Of a DNA stretch of 64,000 nucleotides, positions 14,532 to 36,511 are shown piece after piece. The position numbers and the translations under genes were made by a program. The DNA lies in IMG/VR virus record IMGVR_UViG_3300036770_007539, positions 186,001 to 250,000 of that record. One strand, written 5' to 3'. The notes under the pieces are model-generated. The model was not told the DNA's origin, did no database searches, and saw only the letters and a program-made list of their open reading frames with translations. Numbering within the stretch: position 1 is the stretch's first letter; each line of letters opens with the position of its first letter.

Positions 14532-15223
14532 AAATTTTAGATACTTATAAAAAGTATTTAGATCTTGGCACAAATGAAGGATTAAGATATAATGATGAGA
14601 GTAAATCTCGTTTTGTTTCTTTTAATATGTGCTTAGAGCGTCTTGCAAAATTAAGTGCCCCTAAAATATTGGAACTAGGGACTAGTCGTAGTTATGTTGA
14701 TGGAAAATTTCCAGGATGTAACTCTGATGATAAAAAATTTTGGAATAAAGATGACTTTTCAAAATGGGACTGGGGCGCAGGGTGTTTTACATTAATGTTT
14801 GGAATGCATCTTCCAAATGCAAAAATTACTACATTAGATTTAATTCCCAATCACATTAATAGATGCCAATATATGACCTCTTCTTTGGATCTTGATAACG
14901 TATCCCATGTTGTATCTGATTCAATAAGTTATTTAAACAGCACGAGTGAATCATATGATCTAATTTATTTAGATACAGGCGATATGCACCCAATAGAGCC
15001 AACTTGCCTTCTCCAGTTGGAAGAGGCTAAATCTATTGTTGGCAAAAAAATATTAAATGCTCAAGGTCTGCTTTTAATTGATGATGTATTAAATGGAACT
15101 CCAAGAGAGATGGGAGATCTATCAAATAGATATGGTAAGTCAGAATTAGCTTTGCCTTATTTATTAAATAATAATTATAAATTATTATTTGAAGGTTATC
15201 AATATATTTTAACGCAAGGATAA
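14528..15223 (+). CDS. SAM-dependent methyltransferase (Methyltransf_24-like)
   Basis: ILELGT, SDS, YDLIYLDT, LLLIDD. Confidence 0.78.
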   Translation: MKILDTYKKYLDLGTNEGLRYNDESKSRFVSFNMCLERLAKLSAPKILELGTSRSYVDGKFPGCNSDDKKFWNKDDFSKWDWGAGCFTLMFGMHLPNAKITTLDLIPNHINRCQYMTSSLDLDNVSHVVSDSISYLNSTSESYDLIYLDTGDMHPIEPTCLLQLEEAKSIVGKKILNAQGLLLIDDVLNGTPREMGDLSNRYGKSELALPYLLNNNYKLLFEGYQYILTQG

Positions 15224-15224
15224 A

Positions 15225-16133
15225 ATGAAAGTTTTAATTACAGGGGGAGCTGGTTTTATTGGAAGCCATCTTGCGGATAAATTATTAGAATTAAATCATG
15301 AAGTTTTTGTTCTTGATGATTTATCTTCTGGAGATTTAAATAATTTATCTGCAAGGTGTAAATTTTTTGAAGTTGAAATATGCGATAAAAATTCAATTTC
15401 AAAAGCTTTTGAAATAGTTAAACCAGATGCTGTTTATCATTTGGCAGCTCAAATTAACGTAAGAAAATCCATTACAGATCCTGTATCAGATGCAGAAATC
15501 AATACTATTGGAACATTGAATGTTTTAAGCGAATGCGTTAAGCATAAAGTTAATAAGATTATTTTTTCTTCTTCTGGTGGTGCTATTTATCAAGATGATA
15601 ATGATTTTCTTAAAACAGAAAATTCTGTAATTCAACCAGCTTCTCCTTATGGAATTTCTAAATGGACAGGTGAGCAGTATATTAAATTTTATAAAGAAAT
15701 TTACGGTCTAGACTATACAATATTAAGATTAAGTAATGTGTATGGTCCCAGACAAAATAGCAAGGGAGAGGCTGGAGTTATTTCTATTTTTATTAATAAT
15801 GTTAAAGGCAATAAGCCCTTAACTGTTTTTGGCACAGGTGAACAAATTAGAGATTATATTTACGTAGAAGATGTCGTTAATGCAATGGAGTTATCTTTAA
15901 GAGTTTCGGGCACATTTAACGTTTCTACTGGAAAAGAAACAAAAGTTAATCAGCTCGTTGATAAAATATGTTCAGAATTTAATTATGATACTGTACTGTA
16001 TGCTCCTAAAATTGAGGGCGAATTGTTTAGAAATTGTTTGTCTTCTAAACTGCTACAGTCTTATGGATGGCAAGTTCTACATGATATAGAATCTGGTCTT
16101 AATAAAACAATAAAATATTTTAAAAATAATTAA
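15225..16133 (+). CDS. NAD-dependent nucleotide-sugar epimerase (UDP-Glc/GlcNAc 4-epimerase-like)
   Basis: TGGAGFIG, HLAAQ, YGISK (YxxxK), NVYGPRQ, RDYIYVED. Confidence 0.9.
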   Translation: MKVLITGGAGFIGSHLADKLLELNHEVFVLDDLSSGDLNNLSARCKFFEVEICDKNSISKAFEIVKPDAVYHLAAQINVRKSITDPVSDAEINTIGTLNVLSECVKHKVNKIIFSSSGGAIYQDDNDFLKTENSVIQPASPYGISKWTGEQYIKFYKEIYGLDYTILRLSNVYGPRQNSKGEAGVISIFINNVKGNKPLTVFGTGEQIRDYIYVEDVVNAMELSLRVSGTFNVSTGKETKVNQLVDKICSEFNYDTVLYAPKIEGELFRNCLSSKLLQSYGWQVLHDIESGLNKTIKYFKNN

Positions 16134-16138
16134 AAATT

Positions 16139-17140
16139 ATGAAGAAAGTTTTAATTACTGGCGTAACAGGTCAAACAGGCTCTATTCTTGTTGAAAATTA
16201 TTTAAAACAAGGAGATTATGTTCACGGTATGATTAGAAGAAATTCTAATTTTAACACTAGAAGAATTGATCATGTATATAATCATCCCAATTTAAAATTA
16301 TTTTATGGTGATTTGGCAGATTATGGTTCTATTTGTTCAGCTGTATCCGATTTAAAGCCTGATTATTTTATTAATTGTGGGGCTCAGTCTTATGTCAAAG
16401 CTTCTTTTGATATTCCTGAATACACTTTTGATATTGATGCAACTGGAACTATTAGATGCCTTGAAGCAATTAGAAAGTTTAGTAAAAATACTAAGTTTTT
16501 ACAGTGCTCTACTTCTGAGTTATATGGTTCAACTCCACCTCCTCAAAGTGAAACTACATCGTTTCATCCACGCTCCCCTTATGGGGCAGCTAAAATTGCT
16601 GCTTACTGGGCAACTGTAAATTATAGAGAAGCATATAATATGTTTGCTGTAAACTCGATCTCGTTCAACCATGAAAACTCTAAAAGATCAGAGCACTTCG
16701 TTACTCGTAAAATTACCCGAGCAGCTACTAGAATTAAACTTGGTCTTCAAGATAAATTAACTCTTGGCAATCTCGAAGCTAAAAGAGATTGGTGTGATGC
16801 TCGTGATATTGCCCGTGGTCAAATGATGATGCTAGATTCTGATGTTCCAGATGATTATGTCTTGTGCTCTGGCAAGTCTCGTTCAGTAAAAGAATTTGCT
16901 GACATTGTTTTTTCTAAATTGGGTCTGAATTATCAAGATTATGTTGAAGTTTCAGATAAGCATTTTAGACCCTCAGAAGTAGATCATCTTTGCGGAGACT
17001 ATACAAAAATTAATAAAGCTTTAGGCTGGGAGCCTCTAATTTCTTTTGATCAAATGGTCGAGGAGATGATCGATCACGATCTCAAGCTTGCCCAACAAGA
17101 GCAGGTCTTAGCTCAAAACGGATTTAAATATACTCTATGA
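16139..17140 (+). CDS. gmd: GDP-mannose 4,6-dehydratase
   Basis: ITGVTGQTGS, AQSYVKASF, STSELYG, PRSPYGAAK, FNHE, FVTRKIT, RPSEVDHL. Confidence 0.95.
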   Translation: MKKVLITGVTGQTGSILVENYLKQGDYVHGMIRRNSNFNTRRIDHVYNHPNLKLFYGDLADYGSICSAVSDLKPDYFINCGAQSYVKASFDIPEYTFDIDATGTIRCLEAIRKFSKNTKFLQCSTSELYGSTPPPQSETTSFHPRSPYGAAKIAAYWATVNYREAYNMFAVNSISFNHENSKRSEHFVTRKITRAATRIKLGLQDKLTLGNLEAKRDWCDARDIARGQMMMLDSDVPDDYVLCSGKSRSVKEFADIVFSKLGLNYQDYVEVSDKHFRPSEVDHLCGDYTKINKALGWEPLISFDQMVEEMIDHDLKLAQQEQVLAQNGFKYTL

Positions 17141-18096
17141 AAGTTTTAGTTACAGGCGCAGCCGGATTTATTGGTGCTAATTTTATTAGGCGCTCTACTT
17201 ACCTAAAAGGTAAAGAACATCAATTTGTATCTATAGACAGTCTTTTATATCCTCATAGCAAAAGTAATTTCTATATCAGTAATGGAAAGTCTGATAGTTT
17301 TTATATGGCTGATATTGCTGATAAAAAGATTATTGATAATATTTTTGAAATTGAAAAACCTGATATTATCGTGCATTTCGCCGCAGAGTCTCATGTAGAT
17401 CATTCTATTGAAACGGCAGCGCCCTTTATACACTCTAATGTTTTGGGTACACAAACTTTAATTGATTGTGCCGTTAAACATAAGGTCAAAACTTTCTTTT
17501 ATATTTCTACGGATGAAGTGTATGGTCAGTTAAAATCTGAAAATGAAGAAGGTTGGGATGAATCCGCTTTCCCTAATCCTAGAAATCCATACTCTGCTTC
17601 TAAATTGTCCGGTGAGTTTTTAGTTAAAGCAGCTCACGAAACTCATAAACTTCAATATATTATTAGTCGATGCTCCAATAATTTTGGACCTAGACAATCC
17701 ACTAGGAACCTTATTCCAAAAGTTATAAAAAATATTGCAGAGGGCGTCGATGTTCCAATTTATGGTCAGGGTCAGCAAATGCGAGAGTGGATCTTTGTAG
17801 AAGACCACTGCGATGCCATCTGGCACATTATAGAGTCTAAACAATATAATCAAATCTATAATATTTCTACTGGCAATGAAATTACTAACCTAGAATTAGT
17901 TAATCATATTGCTAATATTATGGGCAGAGGTCATAATTTATTTAAATTTGTTCCTGATAGACCCGGACATGATTTTAGATACTCTTGCAAATCAGATAAA
18001 CTTCGAGCCTTGGGCTGGAAGCCAAGTGTAAAATTTACTAAGGCGCTAGAGTCTACCATATCATGGTATGACAATAATAGGTGGTTTTTTAAATGA
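17137..18096 (+). CDS. rmlB: dTDP-glucose 4,6-dehydratase
   Basis: HFAAESHVDHSI, STDEVYG, PYSASK, RCSNNFGP, DRPGHDFRY. Confidence 0.95.
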   Translation: MKVLVTGAAGFIGANFIRRSTYLKGKEHQFVSIDSLLYPHSKSNFYISNGKSDSFYMADIADKKIIDNIFEIEKPDIIVHFAAESHVDHSIETAAPFIHSNVLGTQTLIDCAVKHKVKTFFYISTDEVYGQLKSENEEGWDESAFPNPRNPYSASKLSGEFLVKAAHETHKLQYIISRCSNNFGPRQSTRNLIPKVIKNIAEGVDVPIYGQGQQMREWIFVEDHCDAIWHIIESKQYNQIYNISTGNEITNLELVNHIANIMGRGHNLFKFVPDRPGHDFRYSCKSDKLRALGWKPSVKFTKALESTISWYDNNRWFFK

Positions 18097-18690: not shown

Positions 18691-20010
18691 ATGATTAAAA
18701 CCGAAGAAAAGCAAATTGAAAAACCCACAGTTGTTGATGATCTTGATAAAGATACACTCAGCGCTTTAAAAGCAAAACTCGCTAAAAAGGAAGAGTCAAC
18801 TATGTCACCTAAAATTGTAGCACCTAAAAAACGAAGTATTAACCTTGGCGTTGTAGGAACGGGTCAAGGCGGATCTAGATTAGCAGAAGCATTTTATGCC
18901 CTTGGATATAACGCTATTGTTATGAATACCGCTCCACAAGATCTGGAGCACATCGACGTTCCAGAAGCTAATAAACTTCTTTTGCAGTTTGGTCTTGGCG
19001 GAGCCGCAAAAGAATTAGAAATTGGAAAAGAAGCAGCAGAGACTCACCGAGACGCTATTCATCTCTTGGTTCAAGAAAAGCTTGAAGACGCTCAGGCTTT
19101 TGTACTTTGTCTTTCTTTGGGCGGTGGTTCAGGTGCGGGCTCATGCGAAACCGTGATTGATGTCTTGGCATCTGTCGGTAAGCCAATGGTCGTCATTTCT
19201 GTTTTGCCAATGACAAATGATGATGCGCAAACTAAACACAATGCATTAGAAACATTAAGCAAATTGGCAAAACTAGTTCAATCTAAAAAAGTTCAATCTA
19301 TGGTTGTTGTTGACAATGCAAAAATTGAAACTATTTATAGCGATGTTTCTCAGCTTGACTTTTTCTCAGTGGCTAACAAAGCAATTGTTGAACCTATTGA
19401 GCAGTTCAATTTCCTTTCTTCTCAAGCATCTCCTTCTAAAGCCTTAGACTCCACAGAATGGGCAAAACTTTTAATCGATGGCGAAGGCTTAACAGTATTT
19501 GGATCCCTTACAGTTGATAATTATCAAGACGAAACTGCCATTGCAGAAGCCGTAGTTACCAACTTAGATCATAACTTGCTTGCGGGAGGTTTCGATCTTA
19601 AACATTCAAAATATGCTGGATTTATTGTTGCTGCCAATAAAGAAGTTTGGAGTAAAATTCCAAGCTCAGCAGTAAACTATGCAAGGGCATTAATCCAAGA
19701 ACATGCAGGGACTCCGAAGGCACTATTTCATGGAATATATGTTACCGATGATAAAGAAGATAGTGTTAAAATTTATTCTTGTTTTACCGGCTTATCTCTT
19801 CCAATGAGTCGAGTGGATACTCTTAAAAAAGAGGCAATGGAATTAATGAATCAAGCTAAATCAAAAGATACAACTCGTTCTCTTAGCTTATCATTAGATA
19901 CTGGTGCAAATGAAACTGTTTCAGCTGCCCAGAAGGTGAAAGATAAAATTGCAGCTAAATCTTCTGCCTTTGGCAAATTCATGGGCTCAGTTGTAGATAA
20001 AAGAAAGTGA
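18691..20010 (+). CDS. Tubulin/FtsZ-superfamily GTPase (PhuZ/TubZ-like)
   Basis: GTGQGG (T1), NT, LGGGSGAG (T4 signature), VLP, VDN, ALDSTE (T7-like loop). Confidence 0.9.
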   Translation: MIKTEEKQIEKPTVVDDLDKDTLSALKAKLAKKEESTMSPKIVAPKKRSINLGVVGTGQGGSRLAEAFYALGYNAIVMNTAPQDLEHIDVPEANKLLLQFGLGGAAKELEIGKEAAETHRDAIHLLVQEKLEDAQAFVLCLSLGGGSGAGSCETVIDVLASVGKPMVVISVLPMTNDDAQTKHNALETLSKLAKLVQSKKVQSMVVVDNAKIETIYSDVSQLDFFSVANKAIVEPIEQFNFLSSQASPSKALDSTEWAKLLIDGEGLTVFGSLTVDNYQDETAIAEAVVTNLDHNLLAGGFDLKHSKYAGFIVAANKEVWSKIPSSAVNYARALIQEHAGTPKALFHGIYVTDDKEDSVKIYSCFTGLSLPMSRVDTLKKEAMELMNQAKSKDTTRSLSLSLDTGANETVSAAQKVKDKIAAKSSAFGKFMGSVVDKRK

Positions 20011-25961: not shown

Positions 25962-26936
25962 ATGAGTATTTTAACGCCAAGAGTAACGTATGGACCTTTT
26001 GAATATCCACAATTTTATGATATGTGGCTTAAACAGCAAGCTTCATTTTGGATGTTCACCGAAGTTCAAATGTCCAGTGATATTAATGATTTTAAATTAA
26101 ATTTAACAGATTCAGAGCGAAATGTTATTGGCAATACTTTAAAGGGCTTCGTACAAGCCGAGATCTTTATTGAAGACTATTGGAGTTCTAAAGTTTCTCG
26201 CTGGTTTAAAAAGCCAGAAATTCAAATGATGTCATCTGCTTTTGCTTCTTTTGAAAGCATTCATGCCACGGCATATTCTTACTTAGAAGAATCTCTTGGT
26301 ATTCAAAATTATGAGGCTTTTTTGCATGAGCCAACTTCAAAAGCTAAAATCGATCGACTGATTAATATTAAAGGAAAATCAAAAGAAGATATTGCAAAAA
26401 GCCTTGCTATATTCTCCGCTTTCAATGAAGGTGTTAATTTATTCTCTTCTTTTAGTATTTTGTTAAGTTTTTCTCGCAGGAATTTATTAAAAGGAGTCGG
26501 TAAAATTATTGAATGGTCTATCAGAGACGAAAGCCTTCATTCAAAAGCCGGGTGCATGTTATTTAAAATTTTGGTAACCGAACACCCCGAAGTTTTTACA
26601 GATGAATTAAAGAAAGATATTTATGATGCCGCTAGATTGACAGTTCAGCTCGAAGATGCTTTTATTGATAAAGCTTTTGAGCTAGGACCAATCGAAGGTC
26701 TTGACCCCAAAGATCTCAAGAATTATATTCGTTATCGTGCCAACACAAAGCTTCAAGAGCTTGGCTTAAAAAGCAATTGGAAAAACATTGATAAAGAAGC
26801 TCTTGAAAGATTAAATTGGTTCGATGTATTAAGTAACGGCGTAACATTGCAAGACTTCTTTGCAAGTCGAGAGACTGCTTATGCCAAATCTATTGTAGAT
26901 TTTGAAGACATATGGAATGGAGCACAGCATGGATGA
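25962..26936 (+). CDS. nrdB: Ribonucleotide reductase class Ia beta subunit
   Basis: ESIHATAYS, EGVNLFSSF, RDESLH di-iron motifs; DFF C-terminal tail; AGGAG RBS. Confidence 0.95.
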   Translation: MSILTPRVTYGPFEYPQFYDMWLKQQASFWMFTEVQMSSDINDFKLNLTDSERNVIGNTLKGFVQAEIFIEDYWSSKVSRWFKKPEIQMMSSAFASFESIHATAYSYLEESLGIQNYEAFLHEPTSKAKIDRLINIKGKSKEDIAKSLAIFSAFNEGVNLFSSFSILLSFSRRNLLKGVGKIIEWSIRDESLHSKAGCMLFKILVTEHPEVFTDELKKDIYDAARLTVQLEDAFIDKAFELGPIEGLDPKDLKNYIRYRANTKLQELGLKSNWKNIDKEALERLNWFDVLSNGVTLQDFFASRETAYAKSIVDFEDIWNGAQHG

Positions 26937-28659
26937 ATTGGAAGTATTAAAAGAAAAAGGTGAAGCGCCAGAGTGGTTAACCTCTGAAGGCTTTACCACT
27001 TTAAAAAATGGTTATCTCCTCCCAGGAGAAACACCAGTGCAGCTTTATAGGCGAGTTGCCAACACTTCTGCATCAAGGCTTAACAAACCAGATTTGGCTT
27101 CTAAGTTTTTTGATTATATTTTTAATAATTGGATTTGTTTAGCCACTCCAGTAGCAGCTAATTTGGGAGCGGAGCGAGGTCTTCCTATTTCTTGCTTTAG
27201 TACCCACGTTCATGATACTACCGATGATATTTTCAAATCATATCATGAGGTTGCCATGCTGACTAAACATGGCGGTGGCATTGGCAAATATTGGGGCGAT
27301 GTTCGTGGTCGAGGCGTGCCTATTAAAGGCGGTGGAGCCAGTGAAGGCATTATCCCTTGGTTAAAAATTGAAGAGACTGTTTTGCAAGCAGTCTCTCAGT
27401 CTGGAACTCGCAGAGGAGCAGGAGCTAATTATTTAGATATTGAACATCCTGATGCCGATGAATTTATTGATATACGCAGACCTACCGGCGATCTTACTCG
27501 CCGTTGTTTGACAAGTAACTTTCATCATGCTATTAAAGTTACAGATAATTTTATGCAAAGCATGATGGATGGGAATGAAAAAAATAGAGAACTTTGGGTT
27601 AAGTTATTAAAAGCCAGAGTAGAGACTGGTGAGCCCTACGTTATGTTTACGGATAATTCAAATAGCAATCTCCCACAGGCATATATAAATAATAACTTAA
27701 AAGTAAGTACCAGTAATTTATGCTCTGAAATCTTTTTGCATACAGATAAAGATCACACTTTTGTATGCTGTCTTAGCAGTTTAAATCTTGCCAGATATGA
27801 TGAATGGAAAGATACTGATGTTGTAGAAACTGCAATTTGGTTTCTTGATGGCGTCATGGAAGAATTTATTATCAAGGCAAGTAAGTTGCCAGGATTTGAA
27901 AAGGCAGTTCGCTTTGCAGTTAAATCCAGGGCTTTAGGTCTTGGTGTTCTTGGATGGCACACACTGCTTCAAGCAAAACTAATTGCATTTGATAGCTTTG
28001 ATGCAATGAAATTAAATGCTGAAGTTTTTAGAAAAATTAAAGCAGACGCAGAAAAAGCAAGCAGAGAATTGGCTCAACAATATGGAGAGCCAGAATGGTG
28101 CAAAGGTACCGGCATGAGAAATACTCATACTTGCGCAATTGCTCCAACGGTTTCTAACTCTTTAATTTCTGGAGGCGTATCTCAAGGAATTGAGCCAATT
28201 ATTGCAAATTATTATGCACAGAAATCTGCTAAAGGTACATTTATTAGAAAGAATCCGATACTAGAAAAGTTTCTTAACGAAACTAATAGAAATTCACCAG
28301 AAGTATGGCAGCAAGTTTCGGTTGACTCCGGATCTGTTAAAAATGTTAAATGTTTATCAGATCATGAAAAGGAAGTTTTTCAAACAGCTAGAGAAATTAA
28401 TCAATTTGCTATTGTTCGTCAAGCGGCTCAGCGTCAGAAATATATTGATCAGGGTCAAAGCATTAATCTTTTCTTTGCAGCTCCTTCTGATATACAAGAT
28501 GTATCTATAAAAAAACGCCTAGCTCAATATATTCACGATGTGCATTTAGAAGCTTGGCAAGGTGGAGTTAAGAGTTTGTATTATTTAAGAGTCGATTCTG
28601 TTTTAAAAGGCGATTCAGTATTTAAGGAGGCTTCTGACTGCAAAGCATGTGAGGCATGA
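26929..28659 (+). CDS. nrdA: Ribonucleotide reductase class Ia alpha subunit (short, no ATP-cone)
   Basis: PISCF, SNLCSEI, CCLSSLN, APTVS, SLYYLR, C-terminal CKAC. Confidence 0.95.
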   Translation: MDELEVLKEKGEAPEWLTSEGFTTLKNGYLLPGETPVQLYRRVANTSASRLNKPDLASKFFDYIFNNWICLATPVAANLGAERGLPISCFSTHVHDTTDDIFKSYHEVAMLTKHGGGIGKYWGDVRGRGVPIKGGGASEGIIPWLKIEETVLQAVSQSGTRRGAGANYLDIEHPDADEFIDIRRPTGDLTRRCLTSNFHHAIKVTDNFMQSMMDGNEKNRELWVKLLKARVETGEPYVMFTDNSNSNLPQAYINNNLKVSTSNLCSEIFLHTDKDHTFVCCLSSLNLARYDEWKDTDVVETAIWFLDGVMEEFIIKASKLPGFEKAVRFAVKSRALGLGVLGWHTLLQAKLIAFDSFDAMKLNAEVFRKIKADAEKASRELAQQYGEPEWCKGTGMRNTHTCAIAPTVSNSLISGGVSQGIEPIIANYYAQKSAKGTFIRKNPILEKFLNETNRNSPEVWQQVSVDSGSVKNVKCLSDHEKEVFQTAREINQFAIVRQAAQRQKYIDQGQSINLFFAAPSDIQDVSIKKRLAQYIHDVHLEAWQGGVKSLYYLRVDSVLKGDSVFKEASDCKACEA

Positions 28660-29048
28660 AATACTCAGTAATAACAAATCATGATAGGGCTTCTATCAAT
28701 GAAGCTATAGAAGAAGAAAAACTACAATTTTTAGTTTTTGTTTTAGATTCTATGGGTTTAAATTTGGAGGGTTGTTTTCCAGATCCTTTAAATCCAAAAG
28801 AGATTACAGTTGATCACAGATCAAAACTTTTTGAGACTTTACAAAAGTTTAATATTTCTGTTATAGATTACGCTGATAAAACCTTTGAACTTTATCTTGA
28901 GAAAGATAAAGTTGCCTCTTGGGGCAAGCATTGGGTAGAGTTAAAAAAAGATTTATCGGAAATTAATCCGAAACGCAAGATATATGTAGAAATACATTTG
29001 GATTGTTGGTCTATATTTGAACAAAAAGAGGATGAAAATCATGAGTGA
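28656..29048 (+). CDS. Hypothetical protein
   Basis: ORF with ATGA overlap. Confidence 0.65.
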   Translation: MKYSVITNHDRASINEAIEEEKLQFLVFVLDSMGLNLEGCFPDPLNPKEITVDHRSKLFETLQKFNISVIDYADKTFELYLEKDKVASWGKHWVELKKDLSEINPKRKIYVEIHLDCWSIFEQKEDENHE

Positions 29049-29382
29049 TGCAAAAAAAGCAGATAAAATTTCAGTAGAAGAATTACACTTTCTTGAAACT
29101 CTCAAGAAAGAATTTAATATGCTCAACCTAAAAGTTGATAATACCAAACTTCAATATGAAAATGCACTATTTAAAATCATGAGAAAATATGATTTAAAAG
29201 AATCAGATTCTATTGATGAGACCACTGGTAATATTGTTCGACGGACGCCTCCAGCTCCAGTGGCACCACCACCTCCCTCGCCACTAGTTCCGGAATTACC
29301 CCCACAAGCCTTTGAAACTCCGGAACCAGCAGCAGAGCCCGAACCGGTAAAAGCCAAAAAAGGAAGAAGAGATTCTAAATGA
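29041..29382 (+). CDS. Hypothetical protein with coiled coil and Pro-rich/basic tail
   Basis: GAGGA RBS; PPAPVAPPPPSP segment. Confidence 0.65.
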   Translation: MSDAKKADKISVEELHFLETLKKEFNMLNLKVDNTKLQYENALFKIMRKYDLKESDSIDETTGNIVRRTPPAPVAPPPPSPLVPELPPQAFETPEPAAEPEPVKAKKGRRDSK

Positions 29383-29927
29383 ACGTAAATAATTTGCACG
29401 CATTAATAGTTTTAAGAAATCATGCGCAATCCATTCTTAATGGGGCAAGAGCTGATTTAAAATTAACTAAAGAAGAAAAGTCCTCATTAACGAATGGACT
29501 TAAAAAAGTTGATGAAGTTTTTATTAAAAACTTTGAAACTTGTGTAGAAGCATCTAATACATCTTCTAAAGTAAGAAGTTGGACATCTACCGAGAGTGAA
29601 GAAAGTGTTCTCTTGGGCGCTATGTCGTTAGTTAATACAGTGGCATCTGTTCACCCTGAAGCTCTTACAGATGAAATCAAAAAAGATATTCATCATGTAG
29701 CTGAATTAGTTGGTGTATTGCCCAAAACTTCAAATCATAAAGATGGACTCTTTTCAAGAGTAGATGCTACTGAGCAAAGAGATCGCTTGGTAGCAGCAGC
29801 CGTCAAGGGACTGGGAACAGAATCTGTAATAGCTGAAGATAAGGCTTCTGAAGTTGTCACGGTTCCAGTAGTTACCACGAAAGATAAGGCTGATAAAAAA
29901 GCAAAAAGAGGTCCTAAAAAGGCATGA
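29379..29927 (+). CDS. Hypothetical protein
   Basis: ORF with ATGA overlap; basic C-terminus. Confidence 0.65.
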   Translation: MNVNNLHALIVLRNHAQSILNGARADLKLTKEEKSSLTNGLKKVDEVFIKNFETCVEASNTSSKVRSWTSTESEESVLLGAMSLVNTVASVHPEALTDEIKKDIHHVAELVGVLPKTSNHKDGLFSRVDATEQRDRLVAAAVKGLGTESVIAEDKASEVVTVPVVTTKDKADKKAKRGPKKA

Positions 29928-30673
29928 GCTTAACAAGATCATTTTCAGACCATCAATTGGTTGTTCTGCAAGATGATGAATGGCTGGAGCGACAGCGAAT
30001 AGCTGGTCGCTCCGTTGTTTTTTGTCTAGAATCAGCCAAATCTATGATTGAAAATAGAAAAGAGTTGACCGTCTCTTCTTTAAAGGGTGAGGCAGTACTT
30101 TTAATGAAGGGCTTTGATTGCACTCAGGTTCTAACAAGAGATAAGTCTCATAAGTCTTCAGTTAACATTTATGTCAACGGTATCTTTAATAAAGAAGATG
30201 ATTCTTATAAGTTTCAAGACGGAGATCTTATAAAATTAGAAATAGCAAGTTCTCACAAGGGAGCCGTTGCTAAATCAATAATTACTGTAATCAAGGGCAA
30301 ATCAAAATCTTTTGCTCAAACTGAAATGTTAAAAGTATGTCAAAAGGCATTAGAAAATGCTATTGCACAAATTGAGGTAGGTAAAAGATTGGGGTCAATA
30401 GGTGCTGGCATAAAATATATTGTTAAAAATAGTTCATTTAGAATAGTTCAAGAACATTTTGGAAATGGCTTGGATGAAGATAATATTTTTGCTAATCCTG
30501 TAGTTTTAAACAAGTCTCAATTTAATACGGGAATTAGAATCCAGCCAGGCATGACTTTTACTGTGTCTCCAGCTTTATCAATAGATGGTAAACTAGGTTG
30601 CTGTTTTGAAAAAACAATTTTTGTTAATGAAAATAAAGTTGAAATAATAACTCCTTGGAGCGAGGTAAATTAA
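29924..30673 (+). CDS. Methionine aminopeptidase (M24) homologue lacking most metal ligands
   Basis: R.AG, DGDL, G.RL..IG, G.GL, I.PGMTFTV.P, FE.TI align with MetAP; ligand positions substituted. Confidence 0.8.
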   Translation: MSLTRSFSDHQLVVLQDDEWLERQRIAGRSVVFCLESAKSMIENRKELTVSSLKGEAVLLMKGFDCTQVLTRDKSHKSSVNIYVNGIFNKEDDSYKFQDGDLIKLEIASSHKGAVAKSIITVIKGKSKSFAQTEMLKVCQKALENAIAQIEVGKRLGSIGAGIKYIVKNSSFRIVQEHFGNGLDEDNIFANPVVLNKSQFNTGIRIQPGMTFTVSPALSIDGKLGCCFEKTIFVNENKVEIITPWSEVN

Positions 30674-30856
30674 ATGAAGATCTCTTTCGAGTCAGGTGAA
30701 TATGTGGAAGTTGTTCCAAACAAAGGAAATGTTGTGCTATCTATAGCATCAAAGCATCCTTCCAAACCAAAATCTTTACTTGTAAATTCAGCAGAGCTTA
30801 CGGTAGAGCAATTTAAACAATTATCATTAGATATCTTTCAGGAGAAAGAAATATGA
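30674..30856 (+). CDS. Hypothetical protein
   Basis: 60-aa ORF with GAGG RBS. Confidence 0.6.
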   Translation: MKISFESGEYVEVVPNKGNVVLSIASKHPSKPKSLLVNSAELTVEQFKQLSLDIFQEKEI

Positions 30857-31173
30857 CAATTAGTAAACGCACACGTCAAATGGTATCATCAGTTGATTCA
30901 CGCCGCATTCGCAATAATACACAGCGTGTATTGCTTGCACTCCTCCGAGCAGAAGGAGATTGGGTTCCTCGTACATCTGTGCGGGTGCGCAATGCTACTT
31001 CCCGCATGAGAGAACTTCGCCGTTCTGAATACGGAGGCTTTGATGTTCAGGTTGCCACAGCATCAGAGCTTGGTCGTCCAGGCGGTTCACGTCGAACTTA
31101 TTATCGAATCAACCCCCGCACAATTACCGCTGACCGCGTTGCGGTCGTAATGCGAGATGCCGTTACGGTTTGA
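30853..31173 (+). CDS. Arg-rich putative winged-helix DNA-binding protein
   Basis: RVLLALL...W...SRMRELRR..GG..V...Y.I pattern; AGGAG RBS; 21 Arg, 1 Lys. Confidence 0.6.
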   Translation: MTISKRTRQMVSSVDSRRIRNNTQRVLLALLRAEGDWVPRTSVRVRNATSRMRELRRSEYGGFDVQVATASELGRPGGSRRTYYRINPRTITADRVAVVMRDAVTV

Positions 31174-31206: not shown

Positions 31207-31247
31207 AAATATAAAAGCCTACTAGATAATAGTAGGCTTTTATATTT
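31207..31247. terminator. Intrinsic terminator
   Basis: 18-bp perfect inverted repeat aaatataaaagcctacta-gataa-tagtaggcttttatattt. Confidence 0.85.
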
Positions 31248-31288
31248 GTTGCGCATATTATTGTATTTCTTGGTAGGGAATAACAACT

Positions 31289-32569
31289 ATGAGCACTAGT
31301 TTATATCCAAATCAGCTTGATAATTCTACTTCTATACCTATTGCTACGGATAAAGTTACTCCCGTAAATGCAGAGTCGGTAAATAGACTTCGTGATGCTA
31401 TTATTTCTATTGAAAGTGAATTGGGATTAAATCCCTCTGGCACCTTCGGTACCGTTAAAGATAGATTGGACTTTATTGAGGCAAATGGTGGCGGCGGCGG
31501 TGGTGGTGGCTCAGTTTCCGTTGAGGACAACGGGTCTATTATTGTGCCTGTTGCCTCTACTTTGAATTTCGTTGGAACAGGAGTAACTGTAACAAATCCG
31601 ACGACTGGCACTGCAGAGATTAATATTGCGGGGGGATCTGCAACTCAAGTTCAAGAAACTATTGCAGTAACCTCTCCTGGACAAACTTCTTTTACTTTAT
31701 CTCAAATACCTGCTCAAGCATCTGCTTTGCAGATGTTTTTAAATGGTAGCAAGTTAGAAGAAGGCGTGGAGTATGTCAATACTCCGTCAACAACCGCTGT
31801 AACATATACAGGTTTAATTTCATTAAATTTAATTGACATTGTAGAATTTTGGTATTTAGTAGATGCAACTTCCATAGTTTCAACTTATAATCTCACTATT
31901 AAAGACAGTGGCTCAATAGTAGAAGCAGCTGCAACATCAATAGATTTTACTGGGAACGTAACAGTTACTAGTATATCTTCTGGTCTAGTTGAAGTTAATG
32001 TTCCAAATGCAACAGTTGCAGTAGAGAATAATGGAGCCCCAGTAGATTCTGCCGTTGTTCTTATTGACACGGTTGGAAAGTTAATATCTACTTCTGTATC
32101 TCCTGGTAATGTTCAATTTGAAGTTCCAGAGGCAAAAATTAGAGTTTATATTGATTCTGCTAATTTTTCAGGTGCGACATCTGGTATTGATCAAACTATT
32201 ACTTGGAACGGTACATCTACTAAAATTACCCCTGCAAATGCTTCTCTATCTGGAGGAACTCAGTTAACTACTACTAAATCTGGTACGTATTTAGTTCAAG
32301 GGCAATTAACAATACAGCCTACTGTGGACTCTATTAGCGGGATTATAATCAAAATAATTCACAATGGATTAACTGACGTTCATACTATTTATGACGCTGG
32401 TGCGGTGTGGGGAACGGGAATTAATCGTTCTTTTAGTTTTAATTTTCCTATAGAATTAGATACTTCAGATACTTTGGAAGTTACTTGGCAGCATACTGGA
32501 AGCGCATTATCTGCTACAGATTTAGTCTTTGGAGATAATTTATCTTGGTTTTCAATTGTTTTAGTTTAA
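31289..32569 (+). CDS. Putative virion fibre/decoration protein with C-terminal C1q/BclA-like beta-sandwich
   Basis: Poly-Gly hinge, three V.V.(D/N)(N/S)G..V......(N/D)(F/T)(V/T)G repeats, SGTYLVQGQLT...LDTSDTLEV...SWFSIV tail. Confidence 0.6.
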   Translation: MSTSLYPNQLDNSTSIPIATDKVTPVNAESVNRLRDAIISIESELGLNPSGTFGTVKDRLDFIEANGGGGGGGGSVSVEDNGSIIVPVASTLNFVGTGVTVTNPTTGTAEINIAGGSATQVQETIAVTSPGQTSFTLSQIPAQASALQMFLNGSKLEEGVEYVNTPSTTAVTYTGLISLNLIDIVEFWYLVDATSIVSTYNLTIKDSGSIVEAAATSIDFTGNVTVTSISSGLVEVNVPNATVAVENNGAPVDSAVVLIDTVGKLISTSVSPGNVQFEVPEAKIRVYIDSANFSGATSGIDQTITWNGTSTKITPANASLSGGTQLTTTKSGTYLVQGQLTIQPTVDSISGIIIKIIHNGLTDVHTIYDAGAVWGTGINRSFSFNFPIELDTSDTLEVTWQHTGSALSATDLVFGDNLSWFSIVLV

Positions 32570-32581
32570 AATAAGGTAACG

Positions 32582-35500
32582 ATGCCTCAATTTAGAAAAG
32601 AACAGCTTAATCTTTTAAGTGCAAATTGGTCTACATACACTTATTCTGCTGCCGCAGGAGACACATTCACTGATTTGCCCGCTGGATTTGAATCATCTAC
32701 GGTAACTCAAGTCTCCGGAGGAGAGACTTCTGGACCTACCAGGGGCATTGTTACTAGTGCTCCAGATAATTATATTAAATTGCGTTTGGAACAAGACGGA
32801 TCGTCATTAGTAAATAATGGCGTTATTTTTGGGAGATTAACTTATTTATCTGGGGTTTACACTCTTACCTATTACGTTCTTTCTGGCGGATCTGAGGTTT
32901 CTGCTACTTTGCCTGGCTCTGGAATTTACAATGTAACAATGTTATTTCCAGAAGTAATGAAACTTGAAGAGATACCATCAAATTCTACTATAACATTTGC
33001 ACAGTCAGAGGCGCTTGGCGGTTCAGGTGCAATTATCATTCCAGATGGTGGGAATATATCTGGCACTTATGCTTCTGATGTTTTTTGCGAAGGCAATGCC
33101 AATATAGTTGGCAATTTATGGGTTAAAGGAGATTTAATTGTAGATGGTGACTTAATTAACTCGGATGGGTATTCTGCCTCTATTGCAGGAGATCTTCGAG
33201 CAGTAAATTTGAATTTTGACAGGGCAGATACTAGTCAGCCGCAGGGAAATTTAAATGTTGGTGGCGATTTATTATTTTCAGAAAACATGTATTATAGACC
33301 CACTGCAGTTGGAACCGTTGATTTAACTGTAAATGGAAATATAATTGGCGGATCTTCGATTGGTTCCGAAATGAATTGTAATGGCTACGAAGACACTAAC
33401 GGGTTAAATGTTTTTGTTGGTGGTAATTTAATTGTTGGATATTTAGATGTTTCTGGTGGTGATGCAGATTCCATAGGTGCAGGTAATGGCGGAACTATCT
33501 TTGTTCGTGGTGATTTAAATGTTACTATTTATTTGTCTTCTTCTGGTGGCGATTCAGCTGCTGGACTTAACGCAGGAAACGCTGGAGAGATCATTGTTTA
33601 TGGAAACTTGTCCAATTCATACAATTCTGGATTTTTTGGCTCTGTATTACTGCTGGACGGCGGTGACTCTATTGGTGCAGACGCATCTGCTGGAAATGGT
33701 GGCACTTTAACAGTTTTTGGAAACGCCAATCTTAGATACTGTGATATGGTGGGAGGATATTGCGACTCGTCTATTGAATCTAATAATTCTGGTCAAGGTG
33801 GAAGTGTAAATATTTTTGGCTCAGCTGTTGCTTACAGCTTAGATGTTTCTGGCGGTGATAGAGGAGGCACTTTAACTGCAGAAGGTTCTGCTACTCCTCC
33901 ACACGCAGGCTCAATATTTATTCAAGGAAATTTAACTTCTTATGACGCTATTGGCGGAACAGGTGGAACAATTTCTTCATCAAATTTTGCCCCCAGTTTT
34001 GCGGGTGATGGCGCAGTGGTTTCAGTCGAAGGGGATTGCAATGCAGAAACAATACTAGTTTCTGGTGGGGATTTTATATTTTCCTCATCTCTTTCTTATG
34101 GGGCTGGAAATGCTGGAGATTTTGATGTTGGCGGCAATTTGTACTGCGGAAATATATATGCGGATGGAGGCAACTGCAGCTCCGGAACTAACGCTGGAAA
34201 TGGAGCAGATATTAGTATTTTAGGCTCTGCAAATTGTTATTTTATTTTCATGCCAGGCGGAAATGCTACTGAATCATCAGCAGGAGACGCTGGTTACTTA
34301 GAAATTAGAGGCAATTTTTTATGTTCTGAAATATCTATATATGGAGGGTCTTGTGACTCTTCTGTAGAAACTCATAATGCTGGACTTGGGGGATACATAG
34401 AATGCGACTCTTTTAACGTTGATAATTTTTCAATTTATGGAGGCACACGCTCAGGAGCCACAACTGTTTCATATGCTTCACAGCAGCCTAATGCTGGATC
34501 TATATTAGTAAGAGGGGATTTTCACTGTGAAGGATGGGCAGAATGTTTTGGTGGCGATGTTATTACGGATGAACCTAATGCTTTAGGTGGCGATGGTGCA
34601 AATATTGATATTTTTGGAAGTGCATATATGGCAACATTACAAGCTCAAGGGGGCAATTGTGATTTAAATCGTGGCGGTAATGGTGGCAATATTAGCATTG
34701 TTAGCGGGAATCTTAACATATCTAATCAATTTTTAATAAATGGAGGAGATTCTTCATATAATTCTTTTGGTGGTGGAAATGGCGGTTCTCTCTCTGTAAA
34801 TGGAAATTTGAACGGTAATATAGATCTTTTTGCCAAAGGAGGGGTTGGGACGGATGCGCCTGGTGGTTCTGGCGGAACAATTCAAATTAAAGGCAATGTT
34901 AATTTGCAAGAGCTAGATGTTAGTGGCGGGAGCAGTGTTTCCACTGATGGTTCATACTCAGCTGGAAATGGTGGGAGTATTACAATACAAGGTAATTCTA
35001 ACATTGAAGAAGCTTCTTTTTTTGGTGGAGAAGGAACTCAGGCTTCCGGTGGAAATGGCGGTAATTTTTATATTTATGGTATGGCTAATTCAATTTTTGT
35101 TATTGGCTTTGGTGGAAATTGCGATTCTGACTATGAAACTAATAGAGCTGGTACTGGCGGAAGTGTTTTCGCTCAATCGGCAGTATTTTATAATGTTGAT
35201 GTTTCTGGCGGTAATAGATTTGGAACTTTATCATCTTCCGGATCTCAATTACCTGCAGATAGTGGAAACATACAAATCAACGGCTCAATAACTGCCATGG
35301 ATATTTATGCAAATGGAGGCGCTATAAATACTCTTAATTTTGCACCTTCTTCTGCTGGCTCTGGGGGAAATATTCAAATAGGGGGAGTGGTCAATGTTTC
35401 TAGCGATATTGACCTTTATGGCGGAGATGCTTCGGTTGGCAACGCTGGAGATGGCGGAACGTTAAACGTTCCATACGGTAATGTTATAACTGAAGGAATA

Positions 35501-36511
35501 AATGCTAGCGGCGGACAATCTTCTCAAGGCTCTGGCGGTGATGGCGGAGGAATATATTGCACTTTTAGTGACGTTGGCGGAGTAATTTATCTAGATGGTG
35601 GAGATTCGGTTAATGGAAATGGCGGTAATGCTGGTGAGATATATGCATCAAGTATTCGTGCGTTTATTAGTTTAAGCGGTGGAAACTGCGATTCTTCAGA
35701 CGAAAATCACGTCGCTGGAAATGGCGGATATATTGCTTGCATTAATCTTGATGGCACTGACGTTTATATTGATGGCGGAGATCGATCTGGGTCCTTAGTT
35801 TCTTCTGGGTCTGTTCTTGTTGGACCATCTGCAGGAAGTGTAAATGTAAATGGACAGGTAAATTTGTTATATTTATATGGCAGAGGCGGGGACGTTACCA
35901 CAAATCTTAAATGCGCCCCAGGGGGGAATGGAGCTGAAGTTTTAATTGGTTTGGGCAATACAGTATCGTCCGCAAACATTGCATTTATAAATATCAGTGG
36001 GGGCGATAGTAATGGATATGATGGAGGTGCTTCTGGTCAGTTGAAAAGCACTGGTTCAGCGGTTATCAGTGAAGAATTATTAGCAGTAGGTGGAATATCT
36101 TATCCTTCTTTAGATGCGGCAGCAGCAAGGAATGGAATGGGACCTGCACTTGTCCAGTTTTCTGGCGGTGTAACCGCTAGATATGTTACTTTGCAAGATG
36201 GTTATGGATCTGGATCTCCCCCTTTAAACACTGGCTCTACAGAGGTTATTTTAAGGTTGGCTGGAAGTTGCACTTTTCATACTTTGGACATGACTAGTAG
36301 ACAAGGATTTATATTGCCGCACAATGATGACAGCACTCCTGCTTCTGTTATATTTAAGGTGCAAAATATGCCGGATAAATCTACTTTGAATGTTCCAGAA
36401 TTTACAGATCTTTTACGTTCTAATACTTCGGATATATCTTCTGACTTGGAAGATAGTGTTTTTATATCAGGTCAAGCTAATTGGTATAAATTAACAGGAA
36501 CAGCAATATAA
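32582..36511 (+). CDS. Large Gly-rich repeat (beta-solenoid-like) protein, putative tail fibre/adhesin
   Basis: Dozens of GGD/N...GNGG.I.V.GN repeats; acidic and very Lys-poor. Confidence 0.7.
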   Translation: MPQFRKEQLNLLSANWSTYTYSAAAGDTFTDLPAGFESSTVTQVSGGETSGPTRGIVTSAPDNYIKLRLEQDGSSLVNNGVIFGRLTYLSGVYTLTYYVLSGGSEVSATLPGSGIYNVTMLFPEVMKLEEIPSNSTITFAQSEALGGSGAIIIPDGGNISGTYASDVFCEGNANIVGNLWVKGDLIVDGDLINSDGYSASIAGDLRAVNLNFDRADTSQPQGNLNVGGDLLFSENMYYRPTAVGTVDLTVNGNIIGGSSIGSEMNCNGYEDTNGLNVFVGGNLIVGYLDVSGGDADSIGAGNGGTIFVRGDLNVTIYLSSSGGDSAAGLNAGNAGEIIVYGNLSNSYNSGFFGSVLLLDGGDSIGADASAGNGGTLTVFGNANLRYCDMVGGYCDSSIESNNSGQGGSVNIFGSAVAYSLDVSGGDRGGTLTAEGSATPPHAGSIFIQGNLTSYDAIGGTGGTISSSNFAPSFAGDGAVVSVEGDCNAETILVSGGDFIFSSSLSYGAGNAGDFDVGGNLYCGNIYADGGNCSSGTNAGNGADISILGSANCYFIFMPGGNATESSAGDAGYLEIRGNFLCSEISIYGGSCDSSVETHNAGLGGYIECDSFNVDNFSIYGGTRSGATTVSYASQQPNAGSILVRGDFHCEGWAECFGGDVITDEPNALGGDGANIDIFGSAYMATLQAQGGNCDLNRGGNGGNISIVSGNLNISNQFLINGGDSSYNSFGGGNGGSLSVNGNLNGNIDLFAKGGVGTDAPGGSGGTIQIKGNVNLQELDVSGGSSVSTDGSYSAGNGGSITIQGNSNIEEASFFGGEGTQASGGNGGNFYIYGMANSIFVIGFGGNCDSDYETNRAGTGGSVFAQSAVFYNVDVSGGNRFGTLSSSGSQLPADSGNIQINGSITAMDIYANGGAINTLNFAPSSAGSGGNIQIGGVVNVSSDIDLYGGDASVGNAGDGGTLNVPYGNVITEGINASGGQSSQGSGGDGGGIYCTFSDVGGVIYLDGGDSVNGNGGNAGEIYASSIRAFISLSGGNCDSSDENHVAGNGGYIACINLDGTDVYIDGGDRSGSLVSSGSVLVGPSAGSVNVNGQVNLLYLYGRGGDVTTNLKCAPGGNGAEVLIGLGNTVSSANIAFINISGGDSNGYDGGASGQLKSTGSAVISEELLAVGGISYPSLDAAAARNGMGPALVQFSGGVTARYVTLQDGYGSGSPPLNTGSTEVILRLAGSCTFHTLDMTSRQGFILPHNDDSTPASVIFKVQNMPDKSTLNVPEFTDLLRSNTSDISSDLEDSVFISGQANWYKLTGTAI

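What the first reader, a model, noticed from the sequence alone, without database searches (positions are those of the whole stretch)
29924..30673. Catalytically dead methionine aminopeptidase homologue
Seen, by eye against E. coli MetAP numbering: D97 to E, D108 to K (AVAKS for HGDT), H171 to N (FGNGL for GHGIG), E204 to S (TVSP for TIEP), H79 loop lost; only E235 is kept. The ORF is full length and intact. Known: MetAP docks at the ribosomal exit tunnel, and eukaryotic Ebp1/Arx1 are inactive MetAP folds that bind there. Inference: a phage pseudo-enzyme that may occupy the tunnel exit and modulate host translation or nascent-chain processing.
Basis: partly seen in the sequence, partly recalled or inferred. 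Interest (0 to 1): 0.7.

Follow-up and report, generated by a model that had tools for sequence, protein, structure and literature searches.

The report
Dead methionine aminopeptidase in a jumbo phage
A very large phage carries an intact, selectively maintained copy of the enzyme that trims the first methionine off new proteins, but the copy has lost its metal site and its methionine pocket, so it can only work by binding something, and what it binds is unknown.

Summary
ORF 29924-30673 (+, 249 aa) is a true type-1 MetAP homologue: Pfam PF00557 E 1e-16, and an AF2 model (pLDDT 93.5) matches bacterial MetAPs at TM 0.86. It lacks four of five metal ligands (E106, K117, N181, S215; only E229 kept) and both catalytic histidines.

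New findings:
- **Clade-wide loss.** All 15 relatives share the loss. All 126 other aligned relatives keep every ligand.
- **Pocket gone.** The Met pocket is dismantled, and a 22-aa beta-hairpin is cut to 4-9 aa. In E. coli that hairpin carries W221 and the four ribosome-docking lysines.
- **Origin.** The clade arose once, nested among ligand-complete MetAPs of other huge phages. It sits at the same operon position as they do.
- **Not decaying.** omega is 0.15-0.28 and every copy is intact. It still evolves 5-10 times faster relative to RNR than the one active phage MetAP pair available.
- **Phage context.** The record is a 301-kb viral contig that also encodes an intact peptide deformylase and IF3.
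- **Embedded hairpin.** The ORF's 5' end holds a nucleotide-invariant 24-bp hairpin plus T-run that active relatives lack.

Verdict: a real phage pseudo-MetAP. The Ebp1-like tunnel-exit role is untested, and the hairpin deletion counts against the one mapped docking mode.

The parts
29924..30673 (+). Pseudo-MetAP ORF: 249 aa, type-1 MetAP (pita-bread) fold, catalytically dead
   Evidence: ORF. Pfam PF00557 E 1e-16. AF2 pLDDT 93.5, pTM 0.90. Foldseek hits to bacterial MetAPs at TM 0.86.
30239..30241 (+). E106, equivalent of ligand D97. In the clade it is E in 11, D, T, S or C in the other 4
30272..30274 (+). K117, replacing the bridging ligand D108. K in 14 of 15 and R in 1. A cationic side chain sits where the metals sat
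30464..30466 (+). N181, equivalent of ligand H171. Hypervariable in the clade (Y, N, I, V, L, S, C)
30566..30568 (+). S215, equivalent of ligand and general base E204. S, A or C in the clade
30608..30613 (+). E229 (equivalent of E235, the only ligand kept, invariant) and K230 (equivalent of H236, invariant K in the clade)
30569..30601 (+). Site of the beta-hairpin deletion. Residues 216-226 stand in for E. coli 205-232. W221 and the positions of K211, K218 and K224 are gone
   Evidence: Docking lysines from PMC9810338.
29971..30027 (+). Nucleotide-invariant 24-bp imperfect hairpin with a GC-rich core, followed by a T-run. It lies inside codons 16-35 and is present only in the dead clade
   Evidence: dS is 0.18-0.26 here against about 1 elsewhere. 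Alignment A8. Fold z -3.4. 24 pairs with 2 compensatory changes. Absent in L003 and L023.
25962..28659 (+). Ribonucleotide reductase small and large subunits, at the head of the same gene string. The large-subunit stop overlaps the start of p130
28656..29927 (+). Three overlapping ORFs of unknown function: p130, p121 and p182. p182 is translationally coupled to the pseudo-MetAP by an ATGA overlap
30674..30856 (+). p60, a small ORF that starts one base after the pseudo-MetAP stop. It is present in all clade members and, as a 58-aa homologue, next to the active MetAP of L003
30853..31173 (+). p106, an Arg-rich protein with a winged-helix-like lead. Also conserved next to active MetAPs in L003 and L023
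31207..31247 (+). Intrinsic-terminator-like hairpin plus T-run that closes the operon. Every relative has one, with different stem sequences

Best explanation
SHOWN (confidence about 0.9). The gene encodes a folded, non-catalytic descendant of a phage-encoded type-1 methionine aminopeptidase.
- A lineage of very large phages carried an active MetAP in a conserved operon: RNR, p130, p121-like, p182-like, MetAP, p60, p106, terminator.
- On the stem of one tight sub-lineage the enzyme lost four of five metal ligands, both catalytic histidines, the methionine (S1) pocket, and the beta-hairpin that lids the pocket.
- A lysine (K117) now occupies the position of the bridging aspartate, next to the retained E229.
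- The protein has since stayed intact and under purifying selection, but evolves several-fold faster than before.

INFERRED.
- K117 salt-bridges to E229 and E106 and takes the structural place of the metal ions, so the fold is stable without metal.
- The protein works by binding, through surfaces outside the former cleft. Candidates are the clade-specific invariant KSQxN turn at 197-201 and the 224-248 segment.

MECHANISM I COMMIT TO (about 0.3-0.35). It remains in the co-translational N-terminal-processing niche of its ancestor as a non-cleaving stand-in. Expressed with early or middle genes, it would occupy a MetAP binding site on the ribosome exit region or on a processing partner (PDF or trigger factor). 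That would alter access of the host MetAP or chaperones to nascent chains, while the phage's own active PDF keeps deformylating. If so, it must dock differently from E. coli MetAP, because the lysine loop is gone.
For: - Homology and fold.
- Loss of ligands and pocket in 15 of 15 clade members against 0 of 126 others.
- Single origin. The clade is monophyletic (SH-aLRT 100) on a 0.59 stem, nested among ligand-complete P0014-P0028 and P0041.
- Positional orthology with active MetAPs in L003 (119.6-kb viral contig) and L023 (224-kb contig).
- Purifying selection: omega 0.15-0.28 on codons 41 to the end, CI upper limit 0.42 or less, neutral ORF survival 0.0004 or less.
- Operon membership, with a terminator only after p106, conserved in all relatives.
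- Translation toolkit in the same phage: a PDF with the G-x-G-x-A-x-x-Q, EGCLS and HExxH motifs, and an IF3 35-45% identical to bacterial infC.
- Pseudopeptidases generally keep binding roles tied to their active relatives (review PMC11266112). Huge phages carry PDF and IF3 (PMC7162821).
Against: Against the committed mechanism:
- The hairpin carrying the only mapped ribosome-docking lysines of a bacterial MetAP is deleted.
- The former cleft is the most variable surface, so it is unlikely to hold nascent N-termini.
- The protein is the fastest-evolving in its operon. Its dN is 5-10 times that of the RNR large subunit, against 1.2 times for an active phage MetAP pair. This fits relaxed constraint or an arms-race interface as well as a ribosome role.
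- The basic pI (median 8.4) is shared with the nearest active relatives, so it is not a new RNA-binding signature.
- The apparent invariance of the N-terminal 35 residues is confounded by a nucleotide-level element.
- No partner was predicted (no answer), and no RNA run was listed.

Against the core claim: none found. Loss of activity is inferred from sequence, not assayed.
Confidence: 0.4

Rival explanations
1. Exapted scaffold unrelated to translation. After catalysis was lost, the stable pita-bread fold was kept as a binding or structural module for another phage or host partner. Examples are an operon neighbour, a host-defence or takeover target, or a virion or assembly component.
For: - Fast evolution relative to its neighbours, typical of host-interface proteins.
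- The cleft, the S1 pocket and the ribosome-docking hairpin are all discarded.
- Every operon partner is of unknown function.
- The gene lies next to variable fibre-like genes.
Against: - A conserved terminator separates it from the fibre-like genes, and it is strung with RNR, so it is not in a late structural unit.
- No partner was predicted with p60 or p182, although that result is uninformative.
- The operon, p60 and p106 included, is the same next to active MetAPs, so no new partner gene accompanied the change.
Confidence: 0.3
2. New metal-independent catalysis in the remodelled cleft, for example using the clade-specific C227, K117 and E229 as a Cys-Lys-Glu set, by analogy with non-metal M24 enzymes such as creatinase.
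For: C226-C227, K117, E229 and K230 are conserved in 14-15 of 15 members and line the old active site.
Against: - P0004 has R at position 117 and P0011 has N at position 227, so no candidate triad is universal.
- The surrounding pocket positions are hypervariable and the pocket lid is deleted.
- There is no extra N-terminal domain of the kind creatinase and prolidase have.
Confidence: 0.07
3. The reading frame is kept open only as a carrier. It would serve the embedded hairpin and the translational coupling to p60 and p106, and the protein itself would have no function.
For: - A nucleotide-invariant hairpin lies in codons 16-35.
- Start and stop codons abut or overlap on both sides of the ORF.
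Against: - Selection acts on amino acids across codons 41-249. omega is 0.15-0.28, where about 1 would be expected.
- The sequence still predicts a confident complete fold.
- Length is held at 246-251 aa in all copies.
Confidence: 0.05
4. Recent pseudogene in simple decay, or still an active MetAP using other ligands.
For: Evolution is accelerated relative to the active phage MetAP pair.
Against: - Ten distinct DNA copies are intact at dS of about 1, and neutral ORF survival is 0.0004 or less.
- The bridging Asp is replaced by Lys. H171 and E204 have no conserved substitute nearby, and W221 is deleted.
Confidence: 0.03

Closest known systems
Bacterial type-1a methionine aminopeptidase (E. coli Map, T. 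maritima TM1478; MEROPS M24A)
   Same: - Same fold and length class (TM 0.86, rmsd about 2 A).
- 21-27% identity, with recognisable motifs around every catalytic position.
- No large N-terminal domain.
   Different: - Four of five metal ligands, H79, H178 and the S1 pocket residues are replaced.
- The 208-229 hairpin (W221 and the docking lysines) is deleted.
- About 11 extra N-terminal residues, shared with phage-type active MetAPs.
Ligand-complete MetAPs of huge phages (P0014 on a 119.6-kb viral contig, P0019 on 224-270-kb contigs, the ORF in 595-kb LR756511)
   Same: - Nearest relatives at 31-38% identity.
- Same operon position downstream of RNR, with p130, p60 and p106 homologues.
- Same short N-terminal extension and a basic pI.
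   Different: - They keep all ligands, the hairpin and the pocket.
- They lack the intragenic hairpin.
- The one active pair available evolves at about the rate of RNR.
Ebp1/PA2G4 and Arx1 (eukaryotic MetAP-fold pseudo-enzymes at the ribosomal tunnel exit)
   Same: A pita-bread fold with most metal ligands lost, retained for a non-catalytic role (PMC11266112 and PMC7005732).
   Different: - Those derive from type-2 MetAP and carry its helical insert.
- By my recollection, not tested here, they bind through the insert and a Lys-rich C-terminus to eukaryote-specific elements.
- The phage protein is an independent loss in a type-1 scaffold, with no insert and no basic tail.
- Its ribosome binding is untested.
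Phage-encoded peptide deformylase (cyanophage S-SSM7 PDF; huge-phage PDFs)
   Same: A phage copy of a co-translational N-terminal processing enzyme. One is present and intact in this same genome (PMC3660681; PMC7162821).
   Different: Phage PDFs are active enzymes. This MetAP relative is not.

Membership tests
Peptidase family M24 / MetAP type 1 (homology) | Significant match to the M24 profile and the pita-bread fold | tested here: met
   PF00557 at 61.9 bits against a 23-bit cut-off. Foldseek hits to 1o0x, 2mat and others at TM 0.85-0.87.
Functional methionine aminopeptidase | Five metal ligands: D97, D108, H171, E204, E235 (E. coli numbering) | tested here: not met
   E106, K117, N181, S215, E229. 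Only E235 is kept. The pattern is the same in 15 of 15 clade members, and 126 of 126 other relatives are complete.
Functional methionine aminopeptidase | Catalytic and substrate-positioning histidines H79 and H178 | tested here: not met
   N89 and F189. Position 79 is variable in the clade.
Functional methionine aminopeptidase | Hydrophobic S1 methionine pocket. The residue list (59, 62, 65, 70, 79, 177, W221) is from my own knowledge of E. coli MetAP | tested here: not met
   All positions are replaced and variable within the clade, and W221 is deleted.
Functional methionine aminopeptidase | Peptidase activity on Met-X peptides with Co, Mn or Fe | not testable with these tools
   Needs an enzyme assay.
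Ribosome-docking bacterial MetAP (E. coli mode) | Positively charged loop with K211, K218, K224 and K226 | tested here: not met
   The loop is deleted (22 residues cut to 4-9). K211, K218 and K224 align to gaps in all but 3 members, where the K211 column holds Y, G or S. K226 is a gap or a non-basic residue in all but one, P0011. Loop role from PMC9810338. These lysines are not conserved in other MetAPs either.
Ebp1/PA2G4/Arx1-type pseudo-MetAP | Type-2 MetAP scaffold with the helical insert domain | tested here: not met
   249 aa with no insert. The best structural and sequence matches are type-1 enzymes.
Ebp1/PA2G4/Arx1-type pseudo-MetAP | Loss of most metal ligands with the fold retained | tested here: met
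Ebp1/PA2G4/Arx1-type pseudo-MetAP | Binding at the ribosomal tunnel exit | not testable with these tools
   Needs co-sedimentation or cryo-EM. The host is unknown.
Pseudoenzyme (maintained, non-catalytic homologue) | Purifying selection and intact ORFs across diverged copies | tested here: met
   omega 0.15-0.28 with CI upper limit 0.42 or less. Ten distinct DNA copies intact. Neutral ORF survival 0.0004 or less.
Intrinsic terminator (for the intragenic hairpin 29971-30027) | GC-rich stem-loop directly followed by a U-run, conserved | tested here: met
Intrinsic terminator (for the intragenic hairpin 29971-30027) | Actually ends or attenuates transcripts | not testable with these tools
   No RNA run was listed. 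Its location inside an ORF is atypical.

The most novel reading that the evidence does not exclude
A phage-encoded, type-1-derived pseudo-MetAP that docks at the bacterial ribosomal exit site by a new interface and blocks or re-routes host nascent-chain processing. This would be an independently evolved prokaryotic-virus counterpart of Ebp1/Arx1. Its own expression may be gated by the conserved hairpin embedded in its 5' coding region.
Probability: 0.15. Interest if true: 0.8.

Novelty: new variant of a known kind. Interest (0 to 1): 0.5.

Why it matters
MetAP-fold pseudo-enzymes are known only from eukaryotes (Ebp1/PA2G4, Arx1). The 2024 pseudopeptidase review lists only EBP1 for family M24. 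My literature searches found no phage MetAP, active or dead, discussed anywhere.

Here the dead form and its active orthologues sit in the same operon slot in related huge phages. That gives a clean natural before-and-after pair for asking what a MetAP fold does once catalysis is removed.

If the protein acts at the ribosome, it would be a new way for phages to interfere with host protein maturation, alongside phage PDF and IF3. If it acts elsewhere, it documents how quickly a housekeeping enzyme fold is re-purposed in phage genomes.

Tried and rejected
- **Better alignment restoring ligands.** Rejected. MAFFT with 7 and with 141 sequences and HMMER against 1o0x all agree.
- **Nitrilase-like Glu-Lys-Cys triad (E229, K117, C227).** Rejected as universal. 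P0004 has R117 and P0011 has N227.
- **p60 as a newly gained partner of the dead form.** Rejected. A 58-aa homologue sits next to the active MetAP in L003.
- **Conserved N-terminal extension as a docking motif.** Downgraded. The extension predates the loss, and its invariance is confounded by nucleotide-level constraint.
- **Basic pI as a new RNA-binding feature.** Rejected. The nearest active relatives share it.
- **Complex prediction of pseudo-MetAP with p60 and p182.** No answer, neither for nor against.
- **Pfam and PHROGs on operon neighbours.** Nothing usable.
- **Rfam on the hairpin region.** No match.
- **GenBank phages.** No near relative. The 'Pseudomonas phage Y1' hit is a host-like active map in an unverified record.
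- **Host assignment from IF3.** Unresolved. It is 35-45% identical to many phyla.
- **PDF in the L003 record.** No hit, but that record is only 21% complete, so this is uninformative.
- **RNA-seq evidence.** No run was listed.
- **Model coordinates.** I could not obtain them, so the K117-E229 salt bridge and the surface mapping remain inferences.
Full report
**1. Observation**

The ORF at 29924-30673 (+) is 249 aa, intact and ATG-initiated. It is a genuine M24 homologue. Pfam Peptidase_M24 matches at E 9.7e-17, 61.9 bits against a 23-bit cut-off, over profile positions 5-208 of 208. phmmer finds solved type-1 MetAPs down to E 2.7e-16.

I took E. coli map from NC_000913 as a numbering reference. 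I aligned it with the protein and within a 141-sequence alignment. The equivalences are:
- H79 -> N89
- D97 -> E106
- D108 -> K117
- H171 -> N181
- H178 -> F189
- E204 -> S215
- E235 -> E229

HMMER's independent alignment to 1o0x gives the same pairs.

Only 15 residues separate the E204 and E235 equivalents, against 32 in E. coli. This removes the beta-hairpin 208-229.

**2. It is a clade, and the loss is complete**

A search of 5.8 billion proteins found 13 relatives at 48-72% identity plus one at 37%. Loci from viral and metagenome collections added two more distinct sequences.

A profile search of 1.84 billion representatives gave 3,582 hits, of which I aligned 141 full-length ones. All 126 sequences outside the clade keep H79, D97, D108, H171, E204 and E235. 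All 15 inside lack them:

| E. coli position | State in the 15 clade members |
|---|---|
| D108 | K in 14, R in 1 |
| H171 | seven different residues |
| E204 | S, A or C |
| H79 | variable |
| D97 | E in 11, otherwise D, T, S or C |
| E235 | invariant E |

The hairpin is 18-29 residues in the others and 4-9 in the clade. The S1 pocket positions are 59, 62, 65, 70, 79, 177 and W221; that list comes from my own knowledge of E. coli MetAP. All are replaced and variable within the clade, and W221 is deleted. The cleft is therefore not merely inactivated. It is no longer constrained.

**3. Fold**

AF2 with a 76-row alignment gives pLDDT 93.5 and pTM 0.90. Foldseek's best PDB matches are bacterial type-1 MetAPs at TM 0.85-0.87 and rmsd about 2 A. 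Among predicted viral structures only giant-virus M24 proteins match.

**4. Where it lives**

The window is bases 186001-250000 of a 301,007-bp IMG/VR viral record that CheckV rates 71% complete. It holds one M24 gene. DNA runs that contain the sequence are labelled subsurface metagenome, and partial matches are labelled freshwater or lake.

The window also encodes:
- glycosyltransferases
- a TubZ/PhuZ-like tubulin
- UvsW and DnaB helicases
- class I RNR
- an IMPDH/GMP-reductase-family protein

Elsewhere the record encodes a peptide deformylase with all three catalytic motifs. Directly upstream of it is an IF3 that is 35-45% identical to bacterial infC. It also carries five tRNAs. PDF and IF3 are known cargo of huge phages. 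MetAP is not mentioned in that study's main text.

**5. Origin**

On an 81-row ML tree the dead clade is monophyletic (SH-aLRT 100). It sits on a long stem (0.59) and is nested among the ligand-complete P0014-P0028 and P0041.

These relatives are from large contigs: P0014 on a 119.6-kb viral contig rated 21% complete, and P0019 on 224-270-kb contigs. A 595-kb GenBank huge phage also has a ligand-complete MetAP.

Synteny is conserved. In every clade locus the order is RNR small, RNR large, p130, p121, p182, pseudo-MetAP, p60, p106, then variable fibre-like genes. In L003 the active MetAP sits in the same string, with homologues of p130, the p182 N-terminus, p60 (58 aa) and p106. The dead gene is therefore the positional orthologue of an active phage MetAP, and catalysis was lost once.

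**6. Selection**

Pairwise NG86 on ten distinct DNA copies gives omega 0.17-0.44 with dS about 1. On codons 41 to the end, the least saturated pairs give 0.15-0.28, with bootstrap upper limits of 0.42 or less. Simulated neutral divergence of 17-32% leaves an open frame in 0.0004 of trials or fewer. Simple decay is excluded.

The gene is nevertheless the loosest in its operon:

| Gene | omega |
|---|---|
| RNR (small, large) | 0.02-0.05 |
| p106 | 0.04-0.13 |
| p60 | 0.09-0.29 |
| p182 | 0.12-0.35 |

In a pair of phages with active MetAPs (L011 and L012), MetAP dN is 1.2 times that of the RNR large subunit, with omega 0.12. In the dead clade the ratio is 5-10. That calibration rests on a single pair. 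It points to constraint that is retained but clearly reduced, or to a partly diversifying interface.

**7. Expression unit**

A canonical hairpin plus T-run follows p106 (31207-31247). Every relative has an equivalent with a different stem sequence, followed by a conserved motif ahead of the fibre-like gene. The pseudo-MetAP therefore belongs to the RNR-side transcription unit, not to the structural genes downstream. The timing (early or middle) is an inference.

**8. An embedded nucleotide element**

In a sliding window, dS drops to 0.18-0.26 over codons 1-37. The DNA alignment shows about 95 nt that are almost invariant, third positions included.

The core (29971-30027) folds into a 24-pair imperfect hairpin with a GC-rich centre, and its 3' arm runs into a T-run:
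- The 100-nt fold is -35.8 kcal/mol, z -3.4, and 0 of 200 shuffles fold as well.
- Of the few substitutions, two are compensatory, three are G-U/G-C switches and one breaks a pair. One compensatory change costs an amino-acid change.
- The segment is 54% GC in a 34% GC gene.
- It is unique in the record, has no Rfam match, and is absent at the same codons in the active relatives L003 and L023.

Its role is unknown. It could be a leaky terminator or attenuator, an RNase III site, or a recombination junction. It matters here because it confounds the apparent protein-level invariance of residues 6-34.

**9. How it probably works**

Shown: the protein is folded, maintained, non-catalytic and derived from a phage MetAP.

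Inferred: K117, at the bridging-Asp position, pairs with E229 and E106 and replaces the metals structurally. Function is then by binding through surfaces outside the cleft. Outside the nucleotide-constrained 5' end, the most constrained protein segments are residues 192-216, which include a clade-specific KSQxN turn (omega 0.12), and 224-248 (omega 0.15).

The specific mechanism I consider most likely, at about 0.3-0.35, is a non-cleaving stand-in within the co-translational processing hub. This rests on ancestry, on the general behaviour of pseudopeptidases, and on the phage's PDF and IF3.

Against it:
- E. coli Map docks on ribosomes through K211, K218, K224 and K226 in one loop (PMC9810338). 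That loop is within the deleted hairpin. These lysines are not conserved across MetAPs in any case.
- The cleft that faces the tunnel in Ebp1 is the most variable part here.
- The basic pI is inherited from active relatives.

The main rival, at about 0.3, is exaptation to an unrelated binding role. New catalysis is unlikely because the candidate residues are not universal. A pure carrier ORF is unlikely given amino-acid-level selection.

**10. Comparison and novelty**

The protein is a homologue of type-1 MetAP but fails every functional criterion that can be read from sequence. It resembles Ebp1 and Arx1 only in being a ligand-poor pita-bread protein. It lacks their type-2 insert, and its ribosome binding is untested.

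I found no description of a phage MetAP, active or dead, in the searched literature. I rate it a new variant of a known kind, namely M24 pseudopeptidases and phage copies of nascent-chain processing enzymes. Interest is moderate: the function is open, but the active and dead orthologue pair makes it directly testable.

**11. Limits**

- There is no activity assay and no expression data.
- There are no model coordinates for surface analysis.
- The host is unknown.
- The genome is incomplete, so a second, active MetAP cannot be excluded.
- dS is saturated, so omega values are approximate.
- The complex prediction gave no answer.

Noticed in passing
window 29971-30027 (within 29936-30030): A nucleotide-invariant 24-pair hairpin with a GC-rich core runs into a T-run, embedded in codons 16-35 of the pseudo-MetAP. 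Local dS is about 0.2 against about 1 elsewhere. Two compensatory changes are seen. It is absent from active relatives, has no Rfam family and is unique in the genome. Role unknown: attenuator, RNase III site or recombination junction.
   Followed up: partly
window 31207-31247 and 31248-31288: A canonical terminator lies after p106 and is conserved in all relatives with different stem sequences. It is followed by a conserved motif of about 40 nt (TGCGCATATT...GGAATAACAACT) directly upstream of the fibre-like gene. The motif is a likely phage promoter or 5' leader.
   Followed up: partly
outside the window: G000:C1 about 66147-67135 (L022 920-1908): An IF3 homologue (180 aa, 35-45% identical to bacterial infC) overlaps the start of an intact peptide deformylase (162 aa) that has all three catalytic motifs. 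The phage therefore pairs an active PDF with a dead MetAP.
   Followed up: partly
window 18691-20010 (+): A tubulin/FtsZ-family GTPase with a TubZ-like C-terminal domain, PhuZ-like, as in some jumbo phages.
   Followed up: no
window 104-18096 (+): A long run of same-strand genes. Of the three sampled against Pfam, one is a dockerin-domain protein, one is an 896-aa GT2+GT6 fusion, and one has a weak pyruvyl-transferase-like match below the Pfam cut-off. The run is possibly a large glycan-modification module and has the lowest GC in the window (25-30%).
   Followed up: no
window 30853-31173 (+): p106 is Arg-rich and resembles winged-helix (HTH_39/HTH_91-like) phage proteins by language-model features only. 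It is the most conserved small gene of the operon (omega 0.04-0.13) and also sits next to active MetAPs.
   Followed up: partly
window 31289-36511 (+): p426 (with a Gly7 run) and p1309 vary strongly in length and sequence among relatives (346-596 aa and 940-1320 aa). The first 65 residues or so of p426 are 63% identical even in the distant L003 phage. This looks like a fibre with a conserved anchor and a variable tip.
   Followed up: no
L003 5184-8996: The RNR large subunit of the related phage is 1270 aa, against 585 aa here. This suggests an intein or other large insertion.
   Followed up: no
whole record (G000), outside the window: Five tRNA genes (Gln-TTG, Ser-GGA, Thr-GGT, Lys-TTT, Leu-CAA) lie in two clusters near 30-39 kb and 292-294 kb.
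   Followed up: no
ESM Atlas clusters (no coordinates): The nearest Atlas clusters include short M24 families (227-238 aa), one of them with many Uroviricota members. These may be this clade or further shortened phage MetAP-like proteins.
   Followed up: no
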